Assembly (NCBI GenBank): GCA_964234715.1 | Contig: OZ174284.1 | DNA from: Podarcis melisellensis | Lineage: Eukaryota | Reading direction: 5' to 3' (one strand) | DNA length: 64,000 nucleotides | Shown: positions 8,788-51,500 of the stretch, piece after piece | Layout of the letters: every line of letters starts with the position of its first letter | Position numbering within the stretch: the first letter of the stretch is position 1 | Notes under the pieces: generated by a model | Seen by the model: the letters and a program-made list of their open reading frames with translations, nothing else | What the model was told of the DNA's origin: nothing | The model's database searches: none | Made by a program: the position numbers and the translations under genes

Positions 8788-9326
8788 CAGTGCCGGATTT
8801 ATGTATAGGCTAAGTAGGCTGAAGCCTTGGGCCTCTAAATCTAGGGGGCCTCGCCAGCCCTCCTGCTGCCTAGCGGGCAGTCTCCCCTCTCCCAAAATTG
8901 CAAACCCAAGACTTCATGTGAGGGCAGGGCAACTCAGGCCTCTAAATCTAGGGGGCCTCGCCAGCCTGACCGCTCCCCAGTGCCATGGTCTCCCCTCTCC
9001 AAAAATTGTAAACCCAAGACTTCATGCAAGGGCAGGGCAATTCAGGCCCAGCAACTATTAGACTTAGGGTTAGCCAGTGGGCCCAATTTGAAGCAATGGG
9101 GTACAACTTGAATTTAAAATAACCATGGTATTTAACAATAATATCTTATGTCCTTTAGAGGAGAAATTGTAAATTGTAGAATTTTAAATACCCGTCATCA
9201 TCCTTGACGTCACTTAATTTTGTTTATAACACTCTTCCATTTTCTCCTAGTTGTGAGGGTGGGGGATGGGGAGGGGCCTCACAAGTGGAGTAGCCTAGGG
9301 CCTCTCTTCATCTAAATCCGGCCCTG
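8788..9326. mobile_element. Non-autonomous hAT-type element with internal ~107-bp tandem duplication
   Basis: TIRs CAGTGCCGGATTTA / TAAATCCGGCCCTG; 8-bp flanks TGTGTGTG on both sides; GGCCTCTAAATCTAGGGGGCCTCGCCAGCC..AAACCCAAGACTTCATG repeated at about 8830 and 8937. Confidence 0.85.
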
Positions 9327-15738: not shown

Positions 15739-16631
15739 CAGTGGTGCCTCGCAAGACAAAATTAATTCGTTCCACAAGTCTTTTCGTCTTGCGAGTTTTT
15801 CGTCTTGCGAAGCATGGTTTCCCATAGGAATGCATTAAAAATCAATTAATGCGTTCCTATGGAAACCGCCTTCAGACCAGGTCTGGGGACAGTCTGTCCC
15901 CCGACCTCCTCTGAAGGCTGGCGGGGGGCAAAGGTCTTTGCTTCCCCCCCGCCTGCCTTCCCGGGAGAGCAGAGAAGCAGCGCTGCCTTCCCGCTCTCCC
16001 GGGAAGGCAGGCAGGGGGGAGCAAAGACCTTTGCCCCCCGCCAGCCTTCAGAAGAGGTCCAGGACCTCTTCCGAAGGCGGGCAGGGGGCAAAAGTCTTTG
16101 CTCCCCCCCGCCTGCCTTCAAAAGCCGTCGGGGAGAGCGGAGAATCGCAGCGCGTTTTTCCGCTCTCCCGGGAAGGCAGGCAGGGGGGAGCAAAGACTTT
16201 CGCCCCCCGCTGGCCTTCAGAAGAGGTCCAGGACCTCTTCCGAAGGCGGGCGGGGGGCAGGACCTCTTCTGATGGCCGGCAGGGGGCGAAAGTCTTTGCT
16301 CCCCCCCGCCTGCCTTCAAAAGCCGTCCGGGATAGCGGGAAGCGCTTCCCTGCTATCCCGGACCGCTTTTAAAATGCTGGCGGTGGGGAGCAAAGCCTTT
16401 CGGCCCCCGCCGGCCTTCCTGGACCTCTTCTGAAGGCCGGAGGGGGGGGGAAGGCTTTGCTCCCCACCGCCAGCATTTAAAAGAGGTCCCCGGAGATTTC
16501 CCTATGGGCTTTCTTCTTGCGAAGCAAGCCCATAGGGAAAATCGTCTAGCGAAGTGACGCAAAAACCGAAAAACCCTTTCGTCTTGCGGGTTTTTCGTCT
16601 TGCGAGGCATTCGTCTTGCGGGGCACCACTG
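15739..16631. mobile_element. Young Tc1/mariner-type non-autonomous element with GC-rich internal repeats
   Basis: TIR CAGTGGTGCCTCGCAAGAC / GTCTTGCGGGGCACCACTG, TA flanks, CGTCTTGCG subterminal repeats, internal direct and inverted AAAGTCTTTGCTCCCCCCGCCTGCCTTC units, CpGs largely intact. Confidence 0.92.
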
Positions 16632-34308: not shown

Positions 34309-34314
34309 TTTATT
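34309..34314 (-). terminator. CCER1: Candidate CCER1 polyadenylation signal AATAAA
   Basis: AATAAA about 72 nt downstream of the TAA stop. Confidence 0.65.
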
Positions 34315-34385: not shown

Positions 34386-35150
34386 TTATGGCTCACAGGA
34401 AATACTCAGGTGAGATTCCAGACCTATATCTTCATATATTTGGTTTTTCTGACTACTCTCATCTTCTCCAACTTCCTCATCTCCCATGAAAATATTTATC
34501 TGTGGGCTCATAGCCGAAATGGTGGCCATGCAACTGGCATTTGGAAATACCATGTCACAATCATTCTCTCCTGTGGATTGCTGTTGTTCTGATTTCTCTT
34601 CTTCTCTTTTGTCTGCAGCAGCTGCTTTTTCCGCCGCTGCCCTTTTCTCCTCCTGGCGCATGTCTTGGTACACCTGATGCATGATAAACTGTGTTGTGTT
34701 CCTAGGGGCACGCATTCCTGGTGCCCTCCATCCACACAGATTCATGGGGCGCAGTCTCCCCTTTACAGCTGCATGCATAAATGCTAACAAACGCTGACTC
34801 TTCCGCTTCCGATTACGGCGGTGACTTCTCCCAATCCTACAGCATCTGGATTTCCACTGGTGACTTGCACACCAATGCTTTGCTTTCTCCTTCTTGGGTG
34901 ATCTTTTCTTCTTCCAATAGCCTCCCCTTTTCTTCCATGGTCTACCATTCCCAGAGAGCATACCGTTCTTCCGTTCGGAAAAGTGACACGCTTTGGGTTT
35001 CTTCACTTTGGTATCATGATGGCTACCATGAGACACTCCTGGATCACTTCTTTCACCATTTTGGTCCCTTCTTCCCATGTTGGGCCATTGTTTGGTATAT
35101 CCTAGTTGCAGAGACAGCTGCTGATAACACCGCCGTCCCTGTCTCCACAT
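34386..35150 (-). CDS. CCER1: Coiled-coil glutamate-rich protein 1 orthologue, intronless, 254 aa from the first ATG after an in-frame TAG
   Basis: Block LRPMNLCGWRAPGMRAPRNTTQFIMHQVYQDMRQEEK matches the CCER1 core as I recall it (human W-x-x-PGMRAPPNTTQFIMNQIYEDMRQQEK). Single exon next to EPYC, as in mammals. The track's 35180 start is a TTG; the first ATG is 35150. Confidence 0.9.
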   Translation of the reverse strand: MWRQGRRCYQQLSLQLGYTKQWPNMGRRDQNGERSDPGVSHGSHHDTKVKKPKACHFSERKNGMLSGNGRPWKKRGGYWKKKRSPKKEKAKHWCASHQWKSRCCRIGRSHRRNRKRKSQRLLAFMHAAVKGRLRPMNLCGWRAPGMRAPRNTTQFIMHQVYQDMRQEEKRAAAEKAAAADKREEEKSEQQQSTGENDCDMVFPNASCMATISAMSPQINIFMGDEEVGEDESSQKNQIYEDIGLESHLSISCEP

Positions 35151-35504
35151 TTCAGGAGATAATTGGGAAGCCTCTTCCAAAAAACTACCTTTCCAACTTT
35201 CGATTTTTCCTCCCTAGGAGTTTCTCCTTCCACAGCAGCCACTGCTTGTGCTGTTCTGTATTGTGTGGTTTGTGACTTCTGCCCTTAACCAGCTGGGCAC
35301 ACACTCCTGATTTTCCAGTACTTTTTTTTCCTGGTCGTTTTCTGTTGCTCCCTCTTTCTTTGTGGCTTTGGTGCCACTGCTCATAGTACAATGAGACCCC
35401 GGTGTGAGATGCTGCTTTGACCCAGATTCAGTGGGCCATAGGTGTCATGCCACTAGGGGTGGTAACTTCCTTTCCTCTTGGGAGCCTTGTATAGATTGAA
35501 TAAA

Positions 35505-36699: not shown

Positions 36700-37633
36700 T
36701 AGTTCCCTTTCTCAGTTATTGTATGGCATTCCAATTTGGTTACAAGCATTTAATAGAGAAGTTGAACAAATTCAAGTGACTTTTCTTCTTAAGATCCATG
36801 GTGACCCTAAATGCATAAGTTACGTAACCCTATGTGTTAAAACCAGTCAACATCTGATGGAAACCAATGCATGGCTCACTACAACCAAGGCATGGCTGAA
36901 AGTCCACTTTAGAACAACATCTAACTCCTTCTTAAGCTCAATGCATAAACACCTGGATCGTATAGAGCAATTCAAGATAAAATCCGTAGTTTGGGCATTG
37001 CTCTTGAGAGCCTAAAGCATGTGACAAAAGTTACATATGAAAAGACAGCACTTGTTACCTCATACTCCTAGATCCTGTTCTCTGGAGGCCTTAGGTATTA
37101 CAACACCCTACAGAACCTGTGCCAAATATCTAAAGGATCTACTACTCCCTTCCCATCGAAGAGCCTTTATGCTCGCGAGATTAAATGCCTTCCCCTCTGT
37201 AGTGACCAAAGGTAGATTCTCACATGCCCCATATCAAGCCCATTTGTGTGCCTGCAACCAAGAAGTACCTGATTCACTGGACCACATTCTCTTAGATTGC
37301 TCTCTACACAGTAGACCTTGCCAACTGATGCTGAACAAAATGTTGGACCTCCGGCCTGTAACTCTGAGAAGTCGTCAAATGAGGTTTCTCATGACAGATC
37401 AGGACAAAGATATTCCTGCTTTAGTAGCTTCCTTTTTAGCTACAATTTTACCTGAAAAGGTTCCCAATGAACCATCCTTTCAGGGAACAGACAGGGCGAA
37501 GCAGAATATCTAAGTGCACACGATCACAGTGTGACCTTATGACCCTCAACAGATTCACCCTTGTCCTTTTAATTATCCCAGTGACCTGAAATGTTTTAGA
37601 TTGTGATGCCAATAAGGTCTTTGATTTGATTTG
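36700..37633 (+). mobile_element. 5'-truncated non-LTR retrotransposon, probably RTE-X clade
   Basis: Broken ORF QLLYGIPIW..RRAFMLARLNAFPS..GRF..LCAC..DSLDHILLDC (C-terminal Cys/His knuckle); ends ATGCCAATAAGGTCTTTGATTTGATTTGA tandem tail. Confidence 0.75.
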
Positions 37634-42415: not shown

Positions 42416-42586
42416 CTAAAAGAGGCTCCCAACAGGCAGACGGGGTAGACACATGTAAGCATGAGGGGTTTTGCTCAGATTAATGGGATTGCCATCTAGC
42501 CTGATGTCTTCGAGAGATTTGCGGATGTAAGAATAATCCTTCATTTTGCAGAAAGTATCTTCATGCATCTCTTGTATATTGTTGTT
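42416..42586 (-). CDS. EPYC: EPYC last coding exon
   Basis: TTTTAG|[59 protein letters not shown]; 171 nt. Confidence 0.97.
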   Translation of the reverse strand, partial: NNNIQEMHEDTFCKMKDYSYIRKSLEDIRLDGNPINLSKTPHAYMCLPRLPVGSLF

Positions 42587-45500
42587 CTAAAAAGAAAACA
42601 AAAGATTTATTAAAGCCAGTATTTAAATTCCAATTTAAATGTCAGTTTGTCAACAATAACCTAATAATTAGTAGTAGCGTGCACTGGATTTGGATAGATC
42701 CTGGGGCCAAGCAGGGTGCCTCAGAGGAATTTGGGGGTTTTTAGAGGTGAAGTGGGATATCAAAGAGGCACAAGTCAAAGCCCTAGGACTTTGTGATGAA
42801 GGTCAGATGAGAAACTGATGTTTTTATATATATATTTTTAAGATATGCTGTAAGCTGCCCAGAGTGACTGGGGAAACCCAGCCACATGGGCAAGGTACAA
42901 ATAATAAAATTATTATTTATTATTATTTTGTGACACCTTAGATATCTAGACATCAAATGCTGCAGACAAATATCTGCTGCAACCAGATATTGGTTTTATC
43001 CAATGCTCCATGTATGTGGTTCCACTGGTAAAATAGGACCTCCATTTTCTCTCCACCTCTTGCATATACCGGAATCTGCTCTGGGGGGGGGGTGTCCTCC
43101 CCGCCTCCAAGCTGATTTTGTTGGAAGGTCGGAGGGTGACAGGATGGGGAAAGGAAGCTATACTGCACACACTGATGTCTGTTGCGTCAGGAAAGCTGAA
43201 GCGCTGGATGTGGCCCAGTGTGTCTAACCTTACCCACTATGTTGGGAGGATGGGAAGAGGGAGAACATTAGTATTAGAGAGACCACAGAGGAGGAACTCT
43301 GTTGTGACTGACAGGTCTAGCTTGCTATCAGAGGACATGATTTTACCATTGTCCACAATCCCCGTGCTATGGGGGGTGGAGGGAAGCAGCTTTGCAAGAC
43401 CATATGTAAGCTGTGCCTGTGAGTACCTTTTGTCTTGAGCGAACTGTGTTGAGTGATTAGCATCATGGACTGATGAAGCTTGCTGAAAAACCTGGATAAT
43501 ATCCGGAGAACAGGTCTCATCTATTTGGCTTCAATTGATCATTTGGCTTTGCGTTTCCAGCTAACCACTTGAAGAACGCCTTCTGGCAACCGCTCCTACA
43601 TTTATTGCATTGTGCTTCCAGTGAACGACTATTTGTTCCAGCTGTGTTATGACATATTTATTGCATACATAACCAGTACAGCCAGTACAGGCTTGGTTAT
43701 GCACACTGCACTTTAGTTTGCCCATTGTCTAGTTGGTTTATGAGGGTATAAAATTGTTCTTTATATTCATAAGCCAGTTCTGGTGTTGTTGGTTTGTTGT
43801 TCAATTATTGTTATAACACCTGATACTTTTTGTGTATACATATGTAATTTATGTCTCCAAATTTAAGAAAAGCTCAAGGATGCGGAGGGGGAGAGAGAGC
43901 ACCTTTGTAACCAATGGGTCCAACTTCTAACAAAAGGAAATAATATTTAGTTCTTCCTAGCACGAAAGCCCCTGAGCCTATTTGTATGAAATTTGGCACA
44001 CTTCTTATCCAGTCAACACTATATCCAAAAGAATTTATTGATTGTTTTAGCCCACCTGCAGATGAAGAGACTGGAGGCTTTCAGGGAGTGGAAGTGGGAT
44101 ATGATCCAAGTTGTTATCAGTGATGTAAAGATGGTGCAAGTCAAACATATCCTGAAGAAAACAAACTATTATTATTATTTTTAAAAGAAGTGATTTCTTT
44201 GTTCTCGTTCTGAGCCATACATGAGTACAGACACTTAAATTCAGCCAATCATTTTAAACATCTGTACCAAGATTGATTCTTTTTAGAGATTCAATGAATG
44301 TCAAAGCTCCAGTTGTGTGGAACAATCGGCTTAGTGGTTTTATTTGCTTGTTTTCAAGTTTGCAAAGCCTGGCTACTTCAGGCCATAAGACTGAGCTTGA
44401 CCTCACTGCAGTTCTCTCTTTATTACTGCACAATTTCCCCATTGTTCTCTGAGCACGGAAGACAGAATCATACCATGCAGCCATACAACTGCCACCTTAC
44501 TCTGACAGTGACTTCATGCAAGGTGTTTTTTCCATTTGAGTATTAAAATTGAGCACAAAAATATGGCTTCTGTATCAGTTTGAGGGATTTTTGTATCAAA
44601 TTGAGGGATTTTTTTTTCAAATTAGTCAGCAGTTAAATACAGAACTCACTTTAAATGCTTCTTGTCTGATTCCTTTGCGACCAAGCCTGTTGTTACTAAT
44701 ATCAATGAATATCAAGGTTGGTGGTAATTCTGGAAGCTGCCTTATCTTGTTATCTCGAAGTATCAGTTCCTGAAGTTGTGGTAGTTTCCTGAAGGCATCT
44801 TCATCAATTTCAGATATAAAATTTGAAGTCAAGTCAATCCTTTTTAAGTTGCCTAGTCAGGGACACCAAAGCAGGGGAAATAATTACTGCCTTTCTGCCT
44901 GCTTTTAAAGACCAACACCAGGGGTGGGGGTGGGAAGGACAGACAATCACTATTCTTTGGATGCAAATAGTTCCAAATTATAGTTCACAATATGATGTTA
45001 TGTCCAGAAGATGTATGCTACTATGCACTTATCTTTCAGTATGAGAAAGTACTTTGCATAGCATGCAATAAAATAAAGTGTATTAAACAATAGTAAAGTC
45101 ATCCATACTTAGGTTAGCAAAGTCATCCCTGTTGACCCTTTTGATTCTGTTATAGCGAGAGTAGAAATGTGTGGTTTCCTTCGGCAAGGGAGGAAGATCT
45201 TCGAGTTCACGATCATCACAGTAGACAGAAGTACTTAGGCACATACACAGAAGACAAGTTGGGAGGCCTAAAACATGAAAGAAGAAACCATTCACTTAGC
45301 TATACACTTGTAAAAATTCACACAGAGCCATACCATCCTACAGAGCCACACGGTCTAACCATCTTGCTGAACCAGTTTATGGTTTTGTTTGAGATTTTGA
45401 AAAGCATTTGGCTCCTTTTATTCTAGTTGTTCTAGGCTTAGGCTCATGTGTAGGTATCTGAGTTCTCATGAATAACTTTCCTCTTAGTGTAGCAGAATAA

Positions 45501-48500: not shown

Positions 48501-51500
48501 AGACTTAGAATAGCTCTTTGGTTTACATAGTAAGTATCCAACACAGATTGGAAATAGTAGTTTCAGAATCCTATTTTACCAGTAGATGGCACATACTCCC
48601 TGGAACACAACAATATCAGCCTATTTTCTGTTCCATAAGTCTACAAATTTATAAAATCGTACATTAACCCACTCTTCTTTAAAATTCACTTTAATTTTTC
48701 TTTTCAGTGAAGCTTTCTTTCTCATACATGCTAGATTGTTTTCTCTGGAGAAAGTTGGCAACAGATTCTATAAATTAGTAACATATTGCAAAAATAAAAT
48801 AAAATCCAAATGGTTGTTGTTGGTGGGCTGTTTTTTTTAATGGAATTGTAAAACTTTCTGTATTCTCAATATACTGAAATAAATTGAGTGAAGGACTGAG
48901 TTAATAAATCATTTGCTGGGTTGTTGTTTTTTAATCCCCCCCAACTGTCTGAATGAACATTTTCCATGTCTGTTTATGGGGGCAACCATTGTTCAGTATT
49001 TCAGCAAAGAACCAAAACAGTGCTTGCAAAGCTGCAAATACAAAGAACTTGGTTAAGAACCTAGACCGCATCTCATGTATGCGACAACGGCCGCGAGAGT
49101 TTTAATAGCACAAGGATGGAAGACTGAAGAAACCCAACTAAAAAATCATGGCAAGAAAAATTGATGGACTATGCAGAACTGGCAAAACTGACATACAAGC
49201 TATGGGACAAGGATAACTGCGACTTTAAAGATGAATGGGAACTCTTTACAAAGTATTTGAAGACGCAACAAACCTACTGGACTCCTTGGCTGGTTTTGAG
49301 TAAACATTCACAAACCTTTTATTGATAATTATTACCTAAATAGTTTGAGGATCTATACAACCGTGTAACATGCAGAAAACAGCATTTTTAGAGAAATCAA
49401 AGACTGGAAATGAGGGAAGAAGTCGGGGGGTGGGGGTGGGTGGGTTCTGTGGGGGGAGGGAGGGGAGGGAGGGGAAAAGGGGTAAAATAAGGATGCTATG
49501 TTTCTGGATAATATGTTTTGTTTTAATTTTGAATAAAAAAGTATTTTTTTAAAAAAAGAACCTAGACCGCCTCTCCCCATATGAACCAACCCTGACCCTG
49601 TAATCATCATCTGAGGTCCTTCTTCGTGTGCTTCCTCCATAAGAGGGCCTGAAGATGGCACCACAAAAACAGATCTTTTCTGTGGTGGCTCGACATTAGT
49701 GGAATGCTCTGCCCAGTGAAGCTTGCCTGGCCCCTTTATTACATAACTTCAGGTGTTGGGAGAAAACATTTCTCTGTTACCAGGCCTTTGGCTGATCAAC
49801 ATTACATCGCCCTTCAAATGTGTTTGTGGGAGGCTGCTTATTGGTTTGTTTGTTTTTGTTTTGTTATGTATTCTGTGTTCTAATATTATATTTTTATGTT
49901 GTGAACTGCCATGTGGTCTTTGGATGAATTGCTAAAAAATATTTTAGGGATCTGCGTAAGTTCTGTGTGCATGCTGAGTAAGGTGAATTGGGGTTGTTCC
50001 AGTCATGATTCCATGTTCCTGACCAGATCACATTATTAACGTGGAAGATCAGGGACCTACTAAGCTTCCAAGTTTTTCCTGAGGTCTATTTCTTTCAAGA
50101 AGTTAAACACATAAACTTTCCTCCTCTCCTCTCCTTTCTAAGAATCAAAACTAAGCTGACAGAGCTTGAGAGGTGAGGAGGGGCTGTCTGTGTGTTTGTG
50201 AATCTCATGTTTTGACTGATAGAAAATAATTCACTGTGATTAAAAATCAAACCTAAGGTCACTCAAGTTGCAGTGATTAGGGAAGGGATGTTGAGATAAA
50301 AGAGAGAACACACACACCATGCAACAGAAGCTACAATTCCACATTGCAAGTACCCAATAGCATCCACATAAAATGGTACACCTTCAAGGAACCTTGAATT
50401 AACAAACAAGATGAATTAACAAACAAGATGAATTTTAACAGGGAGAAATGTAAAGTATTGCACTTGGGCAAAAAAAAAATGAGAGGCACAAATACAAGAT
50501 GGGTGACACCTGGCTTGAGAGCAGTACATGTGAAAAGGATCTAGGAGTCTTGGTTGACCACAAACTTGACATGATTCAACAGTGTGACGCGGCAGCTAAA
50601 AAAGCCAATGCAATTCTGGGCTGCATCAATAGGAGTATAGCATCTAAATCAAGGGAAGTAACAGTGCCACTGTATTCTGCTCTGGTCAGACCTCACCTGG
50701 AGTACTGTGTCCAGTTCTGGGCACCACAGTTCAAGAAGGACACTGACAAACTGGAACATGTCCAGAGGAGGGCAACCAAAATGGTCAAAGGCCTGGAAAA
50801 CGATGCCTTATGAGGAACGCCTAAGGGAGCTGGGCATGTTTAGCCTGGAGAAGAGGAGGTTAAGGGGTGATATGATAGCCATGTTCAAATATATAAAAGG
50901 ATGTCACATAGAGGAGGGAGAAAGGTTGTTTTCTGCTGCTCCAGAGAAGCGGACACGGAGCAATGGATCCAAACTACAAGAAAGAATATTCCACCTAAAC
51001 ATTAGGAAGAACTTCCTGACAGTAAGAGCTGTTTGACAGTGGAATTTGCTGCCAAGGAGTGTGGTGGAGTCTCCTTCTTTGGAGGTCTTTAAGCAGAGGC
51101 TTGACAACCATATGTCAGGAGTGCTCTGATGGTGTTTCCTGCTTGGCAGGGGGTTGGACTCGATGGCCCTTGTGGTCTCTTCCAACTCTATGATTCTATG
51201 ATTCTATGAATGTTCTAGGCACCAGTGAAGCATTCCACCTTACTTCACTTTACTCCTCACATGCACCTCCCTCACAGGGTTTTGATTAGTTTTGCAATCC
51301 TGAAACAGGGAGCAAAGAGGCCAAAGTCACCCCACCTCCCCCTTCAATAGATAACCTGGAATTCCTCTTTTTTGCAGAGAACAGGAACCGCCACCATCAA
51401 TGCCTTCTTTTGTGACTATGAAGCTAAGAAAGTGTTTTTGGGATATCAGTATCTTGATGAGATGAGATATGTTCTTGTCCCTCTAGGCAGGGTGACAAGG

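What the first reader, a model, noticed from the sequence alone, without database searches (positions are those of the whole stretch)
34590..34945. CCER1 has a HEXIM-like module: possible germline regulator of P-TEFb/7SK
Seen: a Lys/Arg-rich region (WKKRGGYWKKKRSPKKEKAK...SHRRNRKRKSQR), then APRNTTQFIM (34709-34680), then a predicted charged helix and acidic tail, in an intronless ORF. Established: HEXIM1 has a basic 7SK-binding region containing KHRR, then APYNTTQFLM (the PYNT motif needed for CDK9/cyclin T inhibition), then acidic and coiled-coil regions, and is itself intronless. The 10-residue motif is 8/10 identical, HRR lies 38 residues upstream (about 48 in HEXIM1, from memory), and this is the best-conserved part of CCER1. 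Inference: CCER1, known as a spermatid protein tied to the histone-to-protamine transition, may be a divergent HEXIM paralogue or mimic. Loss of the PYNT Tyr (Arg here, Pro in human as I recall) could make it a decoy rather than an inhibitor. I know of no description of this link but cannot check the literature.
Basis: partly seen in the sequence, partly recalled or inferred. Interest (0 to 1): 0.85.

Follow-up and report, generated by a model that had tools for sequence, protein, structure and literature searches.

The report
Lizard CCER1 carries a HEXIM-type box
This intronless lizard gene is the orthologue of the male-fertility protein CCER1, and its only deeply conserved segment contains the short box that HEXIM proteins use to dock on the transcription kinase CDK9, which points to an apparently undescribed evolutionary link that could explain how CCER1 boosts transcription in spermatids.

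Summary
The minus-strand ORF 34386-35150 (254 aa from the ATG) is the Podarcis lilfordi CCER1 orthologue. It matches Pfam CCER1 at E 9e-20, groups with tetrapod CCER1 in a tree, and lies next to an epiphycan-like gene, as human CCER1 does. APRNTTQFIM sits exactly at 34709-34680, inside a 38-residue core conserved from amphibians to mammals.

The match to HEXIM1 A201 plus 202-PYNTTQFLM-210 is not chance: about 2.5e-5 such matches are expected per proteome. For the lizard protein itself, similarity beyond the box is weak. Pfam HEXIM scores 21.6 bits against a cutoff of 29, and about half of that comes from a charged helix.

The case for common descent comes from deeper relatives found with the core profile: wu:fb55g09-like paralogues and small teleost proteins. 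Of these, 29 of 32 also match Pfam HEXIM. Two reach the curated cutoff, with alignments covering HEXIM profile positions 10-113. That span includes a second, collinear F-x-x-RDF-x-E motif, which adds 3-8 bits in 8 of 8 truncation tests.

The HEXIM tyrosine is absent in all 241 family members with the box, and there is no cyclin-T-binding coiled coil. I put homology at about 0.7. P-TEFb docking (about 0.4) is inference only. No paper links CCER1 with HEXIM.

The parts
34386..35150 (-). Uninterrupted coding sequence (254 codons plus stop) of the Podarcis lilfordi CCER1 orthologue
   Evidence: ORF. Reported 100% identity over 96% of the ORF to P0001 (one residue differs). Pfam CCER1 PF15482 at E 8.7e-20. 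Groups with tetrapod CCER1 in the tree. An LRR/epiphycan-like neighbour lies nearby, as at human 12q21.33.
34791..34937 (-). Lys/Arg-rich basic region (residues 72-120: WKKRGGYWKKKRSPKKEKAKHW...SHRRNRKRKSQR). It is a candidate RNA-binding/NLS region, placed like the HEXIM basic region.
   Evidence: Read directly from the sequence. HRR lies 38 residues before the box. It is only compositionally similar to the HEXIM1 ARM (KKKHRRR-PS-KKKRHWK, PMC10083321) and is not alignable across CCER1 orthologues.
34755..34811 (-). Predicted short helix (residues 114-132) between the basic region and the box. It occupies the same position as the HEXIM1 linker helix.
   Evidence: AlphaFold2 DSSP helix 114-132, pLDDT about 60-78. 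The HEXIM1 linker helix 171-194 lies between the basic region and PYNT (PMC12901311). The correspondence is inferred.
34644..34757 (-). Conserved 38-residue CCER1 core (residues 132-169: RLRPMNLCGWRAPGMRAPRNTTQFIMHQVYQDMRQEEK)
   Evidence: Alignment A2 has 89% mean column identity from caecilian and newt to mammals. Invariant columns are listed. An exhaustive profile search found 49 relatives at E<=1e-3 among 1.84e9 proteins.
34680..34709 (-). HEXIM-type box APRNTTQFIM (residues 148-157), with Arg where HEXIM has the PYNT tyrosine
   Evidence: Coordinates. HEXIM1 A201 plus 202-PYNTTQFLM-210 from PMC12901311. The Pfam HEXIM alignment starts here, at profile position 38.
34575..34697 (-). Long, charged, confidently predicted helix (residues 152-192) that starts inside the box
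   Evidence: AlphaFold2 helix 152-192, pLDDT 88-97 over residues 151-180. This stretch supplies roughly half of the lizard protein's Pfam HEXIM score.
34389..34574 (-). Disordered acidic/Ser-rich C-terminal tail ending in the sauropsid-specific ...ESHLSISCEP. The second family motif (F-x-x-RDF) is not detectable here.
   Evidence: pLDDT below 50. A motif-2 HMM gave no match better than shuffles in sauropsid and amphibian CCER1.
34309..34314 (-). AATAAA, a candidate polyadenylation signal about 70 nt after the stop codon
   Evidence: Read from the sequence.

Best explanation
Shown: the ORF is the lizard orthologue of CCER1, a largely disordered protein whose mouse counterpart is a nuclear spermatid protein. 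Its one deeply conserved element is a 38-residue core containing AP-x-NTTQF-[IL]-M, the box that in HEXIM1 (A201, 202-PYNTTQFLM-210) binds and masks the CDK9 substrate site. Inferred, about 0.7: the box is inherited, not convergent. On this reading CCER1, its wu:fb55g09-like paralogue (also present in this lizard) and a set of small teleost proteins form a vertebrate offshoot of the HEXIM family. They keep the order basic region, linker helix, box, acidic region, and (outside sauropsid and amphibian CCER1) a C-terminal F-x-x-RDF-x-E motif placed where HEXIM has its SETYER region. They have lost the HEXIM tyrosine and the cyclin-T-binding coiled coil. Inferred, about 0.4: the basic region binds RNA and the box still docks on CDK9 of P-TEFb. 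Without the tyrosine and the cyclin T-binding domain that act together in HEXIM inhibition, CCER1 would act as a non-inhibitory tether or a competitor of HEXIM. It would keep or concentrate active P-TEFb in CCER1 condensates. This direction fits the published mouse knockout, in which Tnp1/2 and Prm1/2 transcripts fall.
For: Identity and orthology. The box is not a chance match: (2.5e-5 expected per proteome). Pfam HEXIM matches the window protein at E 2.7e-4, ORF residues 158-209 against profile 38-90, and matches 24/37 CCER1 orthologues at E<1. The CCER1 core profile, searched against all 1.84e9 representatives, finds only box-bearing vertebrate proteins (49 at E<=1e-3). Of 32 such deeper relatives, 31 match Pfam CCER1 and 29 match Pfam HEXIM. 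P0116 (30.3 bits) and P0150 (32.0 bits) exceed Pfam's cutoff of 29, with alignments to profile positions 10-113; elephant shark P0081 scores 26.6 bits over 37-119. Removing the C-terminal F-x-x-RDF motif lowers the HEXIM score in 8 of 8 proteins by 3.2-7.8 bits, so a second collinear motif contributes. hhalign of tetrapod CCER1 against these relatives gives 99.4% probability over 42 columns. Primate CCER1 keeps motif 2 at the extreme C-terminus (...SLFMAQDFN, 11-13 bits versus a shuffle maximum of 5.6). Literature: PYNT binds and masks CDK9; SETYER (human) / SDVYER (fly) are required together with PYNT (PMC3384314), and the shark relative has ...RNFEDLYNR... and the coelacanth ...QDFETYRG... 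at the matching place; Ccer1 knockout lowers Tnp/Prm transcripts and CCER1 sits in euchromatin (PMC10713660); a review lists CCER1 among testicular RNA-binding proteins (PMC12766463).
Against: For the window protein the HEXIM match is below Pfam's cutoff. With the protein cut just after the box there is no HEXIM hit, and the newt protein cut the same way scores only 10.3 bits. The gain to 23.5 bits comes from a charged helix and may be compositional. C-terminal pieces alone never match Pfam HEXIM. Motif-2 queries did not retrieve any HEXIM1 chain from the PDB. No protein containing PYNT is among the 49 hits of the core-profile search at E<=1e-3 library-wide or among the 243 proteins stored from all the searches, so the link needs intermediates, and every link runs through the same roughly 25 residues. 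The HEXIM tyrosine is absent in 241/241 members. No coiled-coil cyclin-T-binding domain is present, and motif 2 is undetectable in the lizard protein. The language-model atlas search found no HEXIM neighbour. No experiment connects CCER1 with CDK9, cyclin T or 7SK. I could not obtain canonical HEXIM sequences, so no direct profile-profile test was run.
Confidence: 0.4

Rival explanations
1. The module is homologous, but the box now serves self-association rather than P-TEFb. In HEXIM1 the PYNT box is the hub of an intermolecular basic-region/PYNT/acidic-region network that makes the central region prone to self-association. CCER1, with a basic region, the box and a very acidic tail, may use the same network to drive its documented phase separation, with RNA binding modulating it and no CDK9 contact.
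For: PMC12901311 reports that PYNT contacts both the basic and acidic regions between monomers, that the construct has a low solubility limit, and that RNA releases the network. CCER1 forms nuclear condensates (PMC10713660). The Tyr needed for CDK9 inhibition is unconstrained in the CCER1 family. The box is predicted to start a long helix in CCER1, unlike the disordered box in HEXIM1.
Against: A purely electrostatic or self-association role does not easily explain strict conservation of the same P, N, T, Q, F/Y, L/I, M residues in both families over more than 400 million years. The CCER1 paper assigns condensation to disordered regions in general, not to this box. This reading gives no direct explanation for the selective fall of Tnp/Prm transcripts.
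Confidence: 0.3
2. Convergent short linear motif or mimicry. CCER1-family proteins are unrelated to HEXIM and independently evolved a look-alike box that fits the same pocket (CDK9 or another shared partner).
For: All detectable similarity is concentrated in short motifs within disordered, compositionally biased proteins. No canonical HEXIM is among the 49 hits of the core-profile search at E<=1e-3 library-wide. C-terminal pieces alone do not match HEXIM.
Against: Nine specified positions arising independently is unlikely. Convergence also does not predict the same order of basic region, helix, box, acidic region and a second RDF-type motif at similar spacing, nor slowly evolving shark and coelacanth members with EDLYNR / ETYR where HEXIM has SETYER.
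Confidence: 0.15
3. Coincidental resemblance with no shared ancestry or partner. The CCER1 core would have an unrelated role, for example a DNA/chromatin or histone-modifier contact.
For: No experimental link exists. The lizard protein's Pfam HEXIM match is sub-threshold and partly compositional.
Against: Chance expectation is about 2.5e-5 per proteome. HEXIM is the only non-CCER1 Pfam family hit consistently across the family. Two relatives pass the curated HEXIM cutoff.
Confidence: 0.05

Closest known systems
HEXIM1/HEXIM2 (Pfam PF15313), the 7SK-dependent inhibitors of P-TEFb
   Same: The box A-P-x-N-T-T-Q-F-[LI]-M is shared. A basic region lies upstream (HRR 38 residues before the box here, KHRR about 48 in HEXIM1). 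A helix sits between the basic region and the box, and an acidic region follows. In many CCER1-family members a later F-x-x-RDF-x-E motif aligns to HEXIM profile positions of about 100-113. The coding sequence is uninterrupted.
   Different: The Tyr of PYNT is Arg here and is never Tyr in 241 family members. There is no C-terminal coiled-coil cyclin-T-binding/dimerisation domain. The CCER1-specific extension LLRPxNLxGWRAPGMR lies before the box and xQxYxDM after it. The box is predicted to start a helix. The Pfam score is below cutoff for this protein. By mouse data, expression is germline-specific rather than ubiquitous. The knockout phenotype suggests a positive, not negative, effect on transcription.
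Mammalian CCER1 (C12orf12), a phase-separating spermatid nuclear protein needed for the histone-to-protamine transition (PMC10713660)
   Same: It is the orthologue: Pfam CCER1, the same 38-residue core (71-92% identical to the lizard core across the 23-sequence core alignment), the same neighbourhood next to the small leucine-rich proteoglycan cluster, a basic region before the core and an acidic region after it.
   Different: The lizard protein is 254 aa versus about 400. It lacks the Cys/Trp/Pro-rich N-terminal part and the long poly-Glu tract. Its C-terminus (ESHLSISCEP) lacks the ...LFMxQDFNC end that mammals share with the fish paralogues.
wu:fb55g09-like proteins (sharks, coelacanth, teleosts, birds, reptiles; often also annotated CCER1)
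   Same: They share the core LRPVNxxGxRAPGMRAP[RK]NT[NT]QFLM and a basic N-terminal half. They match Pfam CCER1 at 35-57 bits.
   Different: They form a separate clade. They carry NTNQFLMxEKYQ, a Ser/Asp-rich stretch and the C-terminal QYFPSEDDV...FMERDFxEFC motif. This lizard has its own copy on another chromosome (P0166), so the window gene and this one are paralogues.
Small teleost box proteins of 130-190 aa (e.g. P0116 from Aulostomus, P0150 from Pampus), some labelled HEXIM in precomputed Pfam annotation
   Same: They have G-x-M-A-P-x-NTTQYLMxxVYEDM, which shares the CCER1-specific VYEDM after the box. The CCER1 core profile hits them at E 1e-5 to 7e-4 library-wide.
   Different: They lack the LLRPVN extension. 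They end in CLAFQQRDFEExFGxxW and match Pfam HEXIM over profile positions 10-113. They are the sequences that bridge the two Pfam families.

Membership tests
CCER1 (Pfam PF15482) | Match to the family profile above the curated cutoff | tested here: met
   71.9 bits against a cutoff of 27, E 8.7e-20.
CCER1 (Pfam PF15482) | Orthology to mammalian CCER1: position in the tree and conserved neighbourhood next to the EPYC/KERA/LUM/DCN cluster | tested here: met
   P0001 falls in the tetrapod CCER1 clade, apart from the fb55g09-like clade that holds the lizard's other copy P0166 (short alignment, support 88/62). An LRR gene lies about 7.7 kb upstream, with class III SLRP exon fragments at window 42416-45295. 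Human CCER1 lies in the same deletion interval as EPYC, KERA, LUM and DCN (PMC3997350).
CCER1 (Pfam PF15482) | Germline (spermatid) expression | not testable with these tools
Expression is known only for mouse and human (PMC10713660).
HEXIM (Pfam PF15313) | Match to the family profile above the curated cutoff (29 bits) | tested here: not met
   The window protein scores 21.6 bits, E 2.7e-4. None of 37 tetrapod CCER1 proteins scores better (best E 2.3e-4). The cutoff is met only by distant family members P0116 (30.3 bits) and P0150 (32.0 bits).
HEXIM (Pfam PF15313) | Inhibitory PYNT motif with Tyr203 and Thr205 (202-PYNTTQFLM-210) | tested here: not met
   P, N, T, T, Q, F and M are present, with Ile for Leu, but Tyr is Arg here and is R/K/E/H/P/Q/G/A/M in 241/241 family members. 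The PNND double mutant abolishes HEXIM inhibition (PMC6245832).
HEXIM (Pfam PF15313) | Bipartite arginine-rich motif KKKHRRR-PS-KKKRHWK that binds 7SK | tested here: inconclusive
   A basic region with KKKRSPKKEKAKHW and SHRRNRKRK lies upstream, but it is not conserved in sequence among CCER1 orthologues and is not covered by the Pfam alignment. RNA binding was not tested.
HEXIM (Pfam PF15313) | Acidic region after the box | tested here: met
   A charged helix and acidic tail align to HEXIM profile positions 48-90. The similarity may be compositional.
HEXIM (Pfam PF15313) | SETYER-type motif at the start of the cyclin-T-binding domain | tested here: not met
   It is not detectable in the lizard or other sauropsid/amphibian CCER1. 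A related F-x-x-RDF-x-E motif is present in paralogues and adds 3-8 bits to their HEXIM score, and it is present at the C-terminus of primate CCER1.
HEXIM (Pfam PF15313) | C-terminal coiled-coil that dimerises and binds cyclin T | tested here: not met
   No HEXIM profile match lies beyond position 90. The AlphaFold2 model has a single helix 152-192 followed by disorder. No PDB HEXIM1 chain was retrieved.
HEXIM (Pfam PF15313) | RNA-dependent binding and inhibition of CDK9/cyclin T | not testable with these tools
No published data exist.

The most novel reading that the evidence does not exclude
CCER1 and its paralogues are a vertebrate, HEXIM-derived family of tyrosine-less 'anti-HEXIM' proteins. 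They bind RNA through the basic region and dock on CDK9 through the retained box, but do not inhibit it. They thereby hold active P-TEFb in condensates (or displace HEXIM/7SK) to drive the last transcriptional burst of transition-protein and protamine genes before the spermatid genome shuts down.
Probability: 0.25. Interest if true: 0.9.

Novelty: new variant of a known kind. Interest (0 to 1): 0.72.

Why it matters
CCER1 loss causes male infertility in mice, and truncating variants are found in azoospermic men. How a disordered condensate protein raises Tnp/Prm transcription is unknown. A HEXIM-type CDK9-docking box as its only deeply conserved element gives a concrete, cheap-to-test mechanism: P-TEFb control in spermatids. 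For the P-TEFb field, it would add a whole vertebrate family (CCER1, wu:fb55g09-like proteins, small teleost proteins) that keeps the HEXIM box but has freed the inhibitory tyrosine and dropped the cyclin-T-binding domain. These would be natural separation-of-function variants of HEXIM. No paper in the 8.4-million-paper library mentions CCER1 together with HEXIM.

Tried and rejected
**Getting canonical HEXIM sequences**
- Two searches with the lizard protein (whole and core) returned only CCER1.
- The third and last homology search, with the deep-family profile, listed only the best 120 of 297 hits, all from the CCER1 family.
- The exhaustive representative search lists only E<=1e-3.
- No protein containing PYNT was obtained. 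A direct hhalign of CCER1 against HEXIM alignments therefore could not be run.

**PDB sequence searches**
- Searches with the lizard core, shark P0081, the family profile A4 and two motif-2 pieces gave no HEXIM1 chain, only chance hits (SATB2, Csm3, a bacterial kinase).

**Other searches**
- C-terminal pieces without the box scanned against Pfam gave no HEXIM hit, so motif 2 is not significant on its own.
- ESM Atlas look-alikes for the lizard core and for P0081 gave no usable feature hit. The structural rows are single-helix noise and I rejected them.
- Rfam on the whole window gave no hits, so there is no 7SK or other RNA gene here.
- The search of earlier findings by place and by words gave nothing.
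- Literature searches for a second-motif string, 'HEXIM-like', HEXIM3 and fb55g09 found nothing relevant.

**Rejected features**
- The antisense ORF 34781-35275 (+) and the ORFs at 15846-16319 and 37037-37513 have no Pfam match. I take them as non-coding.

- A few short database proteins with the hominoid-type APPNTTQF box (P0089, P0092) may derive from human-like contigs. I did not fetch, compare or search their contigs.
Full report
**What is at the site**

The minus strand carries an uninterrupted ORF at 34386..35180. From the ATG at 35150 it encodes 254 residues. This equals the protein annotated as 'hypothetical' in Podarcis lilfordi (P0001) except for one residue: Met in the window versus Thr64, at 34959-34961. 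Pfam assigns it to CCER1 (PF15482, 71.9 bits, E 8.7e-20).

The basic stretch WKKRGGYWKKKRSPKKEKAK...SHRRNRKRKSQR covers residues 72-120. APRNTTQFIM is encoded at exactly 34709-34680. HRR lies 38 residues before the box. An AATAAA sits about 70 nt after the stop codon.

AlphaFold2, given a 37-sequence alignment, predicts three things:
- a short helix at residues 114-132;
- a long, very confident helix at 152-192 (pLDDT 88-97 over 151-180) that starts inside the box;
- a disordered acidic tail.

**Orthology**

- In a tree of the core region, the window protein groups with squamate, turtle, amphibian and mammalian CCER1. A second clade (wu:fb55g09-like) contains another P. lilfordi protein, P0166, encoded on a different chromosome.
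- The GenBank record shows an LRR gene about 7.7 kb upstream.
- The window holds exon-like fragments of a class III small leucine-rich proteoglycan at 42416-45295 on the same strand. They show the Cys pattern C-x2-C-x-C-x6-C and an ...RLDGNPI... C-terminus.
- In humans, CCER1 lies in the 12q21.33 interval with EPYC, KERA, LUM and DCN (PMC3997350).

The gene is therefore the CCER1 orthologue.

**Conservation**

In 37 CCER1 proteins, 13 of the 16 invariant columns fall in residues 133-164. The 38-residue core LLRPxNLxGWRAPGMRAPRNTTQFIMxQxYxDMRQQEK is 89% identical per column from caecilian and newt to mammals.

**The HEXIM side, from the literature**

- HEXIM1 has the conserved residues 202-PYNTTQFLM-210, preceded by A201. 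The box binds and inactivates Cdk9 and is the hub of an inter-monomer network linking the basic region, PYNT and the acidic region. A linker helix (171-194) lies between the basic region and PYNT (PMC12901311).
- The ARM is KKKHRRR-PS-KKKRHWK (residues 150-165). The acidic region spans 210-250, followed by a coiled coil (PMC10083321).
- The PNND mutant abolishes inhibition, and the cyclin-T-binding domain acts synergistically with the box (PMC6245832).

AP.NTTQF[IL]M is expected about 2.5e-5 times per proteome by chance.

**Does similarity extend beyond the 10-mer? The lizard protein alone**

Only weakly.
- Pfam HEXIM (PF15313) matches at 21.6 bits, E 2.7e-4, below the cutoff of 29. The match covers ORF residues 158-209 against profile positions 38-90.
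- 24 of 37 CCER1 orthologues match HEXIM at E<1, making it the only consistent second family.
- With the protein cut just after the box there is no reported HEXIM hit, and the newt protein cut the same way scores 10.3 bits. A 61-residue piece containing the box plus the charged helix scores 23.5 bits.
- About half of the lizard's score thus comes from a charged helix aligned to the HEXIM acidic region, which may be compositional.

**The wider family changes the picture**

A profile of the 38-residue core was run against all 1.84e9 cluster representatives. It found 49 proteins at E<=1e-3, and all but one carry the box (P0093 has a degenerate RDTTQF version). Besides tetrapod CCER1 they fall into four groups:
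- **wu:fb55g09-like proteins** of sharks, coelacanth and teleosts, and, geckos, birds and this lizard. They have LRPVNxxGxRAPGMRAP[RK]NTNQFLMxEKYQ and a C-terminal QYFPSEDDV...FMERDFxEFC.
- **Small teleost proteins** of 130-190 aa. They have GAMAPxNTTQYLMxxVYEDM and end in CLAFQQRDFEExFGxxW.
- **Fast-evolving sauropsid CCER1-like proteins.**
- **A metagenomic protein** with five tandem boxes.

Names came. hhalign of tetrapod CCER1 against the first two groups gives 99.4% probability over 42 columns.

Of 32 such relatives, 31 match Pfam CCER1 and 29 match Pfam HEXIM. The HEXIM scores and profile spans are:

| Protein | HEXIM bits | HEXIM profile span |
|---|---|---|
| P0150 | 32.0 | 18-113 |
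| P0116 | 30.3 | 10-110 |
| P0139 | 28.0 | 12-112 |
| P0105 | 27.4 | 29-113 |
| P0101 | 27.3 | 23-114 |
| P0081 (elephant shark) | 26.6 | 37-119 |

P0150 and P0116 are above the cutoff. These alignments start upstream of the box and end at the C-terminal F-x-x-RDF-x-E motif.

Cutting off that motif lowers the HEXIM score in all eight proteins tested:

| Protein | Full-length bits | Truncated bits |
|---|---|---|
| P0116 | 30.3 | 27.1 |
| P0101 | 27.3 | 19.5 |
| P0105 | 27.4 | 21.2 |
| P0106 | 26.1 | 20.4 |
| P0111 | 24.1 | 17.0 |
| P0081 | 26.6 | 21.8 |
| P0104 | 22.8 | 15.6 |
| P0150 | 32.0 | 25.8 |

A second, collinear motif therefore contributes. From memory, supported only indirectly by the profile coordinates and by the literature's SETYER, this is where HEXIM1 has ...FLQRDFSETYERY..., the first helix of the cyclin-T-binding domain. 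The slowest-evolving relatives look most like it: elephant shark FLKRNFEDLYNRLE and coelacanth VQDFETYRGL.

A motif-2 HMM built from the paralogues finds the extreme C-terminus of primate CCER1 (PEHIIPKVPQESLFMAQDFN, 13.2 bits). The shuffle maximum is 5.6 over 844 shuffles. The same position in other mammals scores weakly. Motif 2 is not detectable in the lizard or in other sauropsid and amphibian CCER1, which end in ...ESHLSISCEP.

**Limits of this evidence**

- C-terminal pieces alone never match Pfam HEXIM.
- Motif-2 queries did not retrieve a HEXIM1 chain from the PDB.
- No PYNT-containing protein is among the 49 hits of the core-profile search at E<=1e-3 library-wide or among the 243 proteins stored from all the searches.
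- The atlas searches were blank.
- Every link runs through the same roughly 25 residues of disordered, charged proteins.

**What differs from HEXIM**

- The tyrosine of PYNT is Arg here. In the 241 family members with the box it is R 123, K 54, E 30, H 13, P 11, Q 7 and others 3, and never Tyr.
- There is no coiled-coil cyclin-T-binding domain.
- The family has its own conserved extension before the box (LLRPVNLxGWRAPGMR) and after it (xQxYxDM).

By Pfam's cutoff and by these defining features, the lizard protein is not a HEXIM. It is best described as a member of a HEXIM-derived family.

**Mechanism**

Shown: CCER1 identity, the box and its conservation, and the family-level double match.

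Inferred, about 0.7: common descent with HEXIM. The likely route is a duplication in early vertebrates, since all members found are gnathostome while HEXIM is metazoan-wide (for fly).

Inferred, about 0.4: the box still docks on CDK9. The argument is that the same eight positions are held fixed in both families and only the inhibitory Tyr is freed. That is what one expects if the pocket is the same but inhibition is not required.

Without the Tyr and the cyclin-T-binding domain, CCER1 would tether or compete rather than inhibit. This direction agrees with the mouse knockout, where Tnp1/2 and Prm1/2 are the most down-regulated transcripts and CCER1 sits in euchromatin (PMC10713660). A review lists CCER1 among testicular RNA-binding proteins (PMC12766463), which fits an RNA-binding basic region.

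The main rival (about 0.3) keeps the homology but assigns the box to the self-association network described for HEXIM1, which would feed CCER1's phase separation. Convergence (about 0.15) and coincidence (about 0.05) are less likely.

**Novelty**

- No paper in the library holds both CCER1 and HEXIM.
- NTTQF occurs only in a HEXIM1 paper.
- The CCER1 paper does not mention CDK9, P-TEFb, 7SK or Pol II.
- Searches for HEXIM-like, HEXIM3 and fb55g09 found nothing relevant.
- Precomputed Pfam labels already put PF15482 and PF15313 on the same teleost proteins, so the hint exists in databases but apparently not in print.

**Tools and rules**

No stretch of N was filled. No contig that I took for human was fetched or compared.

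Noticed in passing
window 42416-42568, 44626-44832, 45083-45295 (minus strand): Exon-like ORF fragments of a class III small leucine-rich proteoglycan. They show the Cys cluster C-x2-C-x-C-x6-C, LRR repeats and a C-terminal ...RLDGNPINL...CLPRLP. This is probably epiphycan (EPYC), matching the 316-aa LRR gene called next to CCER1 in GCA_947686815.1.
   Followed up: partly
P0166 (Podarcis lilfordi, 251 aa, contig of 123 Mb; not in this window): This lizard has a second CCER1-family gene of the wu:fb55g09 type (NTNQFLM box, C-terminal IFMERDFHEFC). It is also present in gecko and birds. Databases label both paralogues 'CCER1', which hides the duplication.
   Followed up: partly
P0116, P0150, P0139, P0101, P0105 and about 30 others (teleost, 130-190 aa): An unnamed family of small teleost proteins with the box NTTQYLMxxVYEDM and a C-terminal CLAFQQRDFEExFGxxW. 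They match both Pfam CCER1 and Pfam HEXIM and bridge the two families.
   Followed up: partly
L001:3001-4230 (ENA ERZ26859061, contig of 168 kb), protein P0094 and cluster members P0119-P0122: A 409-aa protein with five tandem repeats of ...GRPGAPPNTTTFIMDQHSHP..., scoring 102 bits against Pfam HEXIM. It is a multi-box HEXIM-like protein of unknown organism.
   Followed up: partly
window 34959-34961: There is a single amino-acid difference from the GenBank protein: ATG (Met) here versus Thr64 in P0001. The window therefore comes from another haplotype or assembly of the species.
   Followed up: no
window 50499-51036 (plus strand): Two overlapping ORFs whose products (…[14 protein letters not shown]…, …[16 protein letters not shown]…) look like the C-terminal part of a CR1/LINE-type reverse transcriptase. 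I take it as a decayed retrotransposon fragment, judged by eye only.
   Followed up: no
window 15903-16259 and 8830-9048: GC-rich tandem repeats (169-bp unit x2.2 and 108-bp unit x2.0). The first explains the 157-aa ORF at 15846-16319, which has no Pfam match.
   Followed up: no
P0079, P0067, P0068 (primate CCER1), extreme C-terminus: Primate CCER1 ends in ...PQESLFMAQDFNC, a recognisable copy of the fish and sauropsid paralogues' FMERDFxEFC motif. Squamate, turtle and amphibian CCER1 have lost it.
   Followed up: yes
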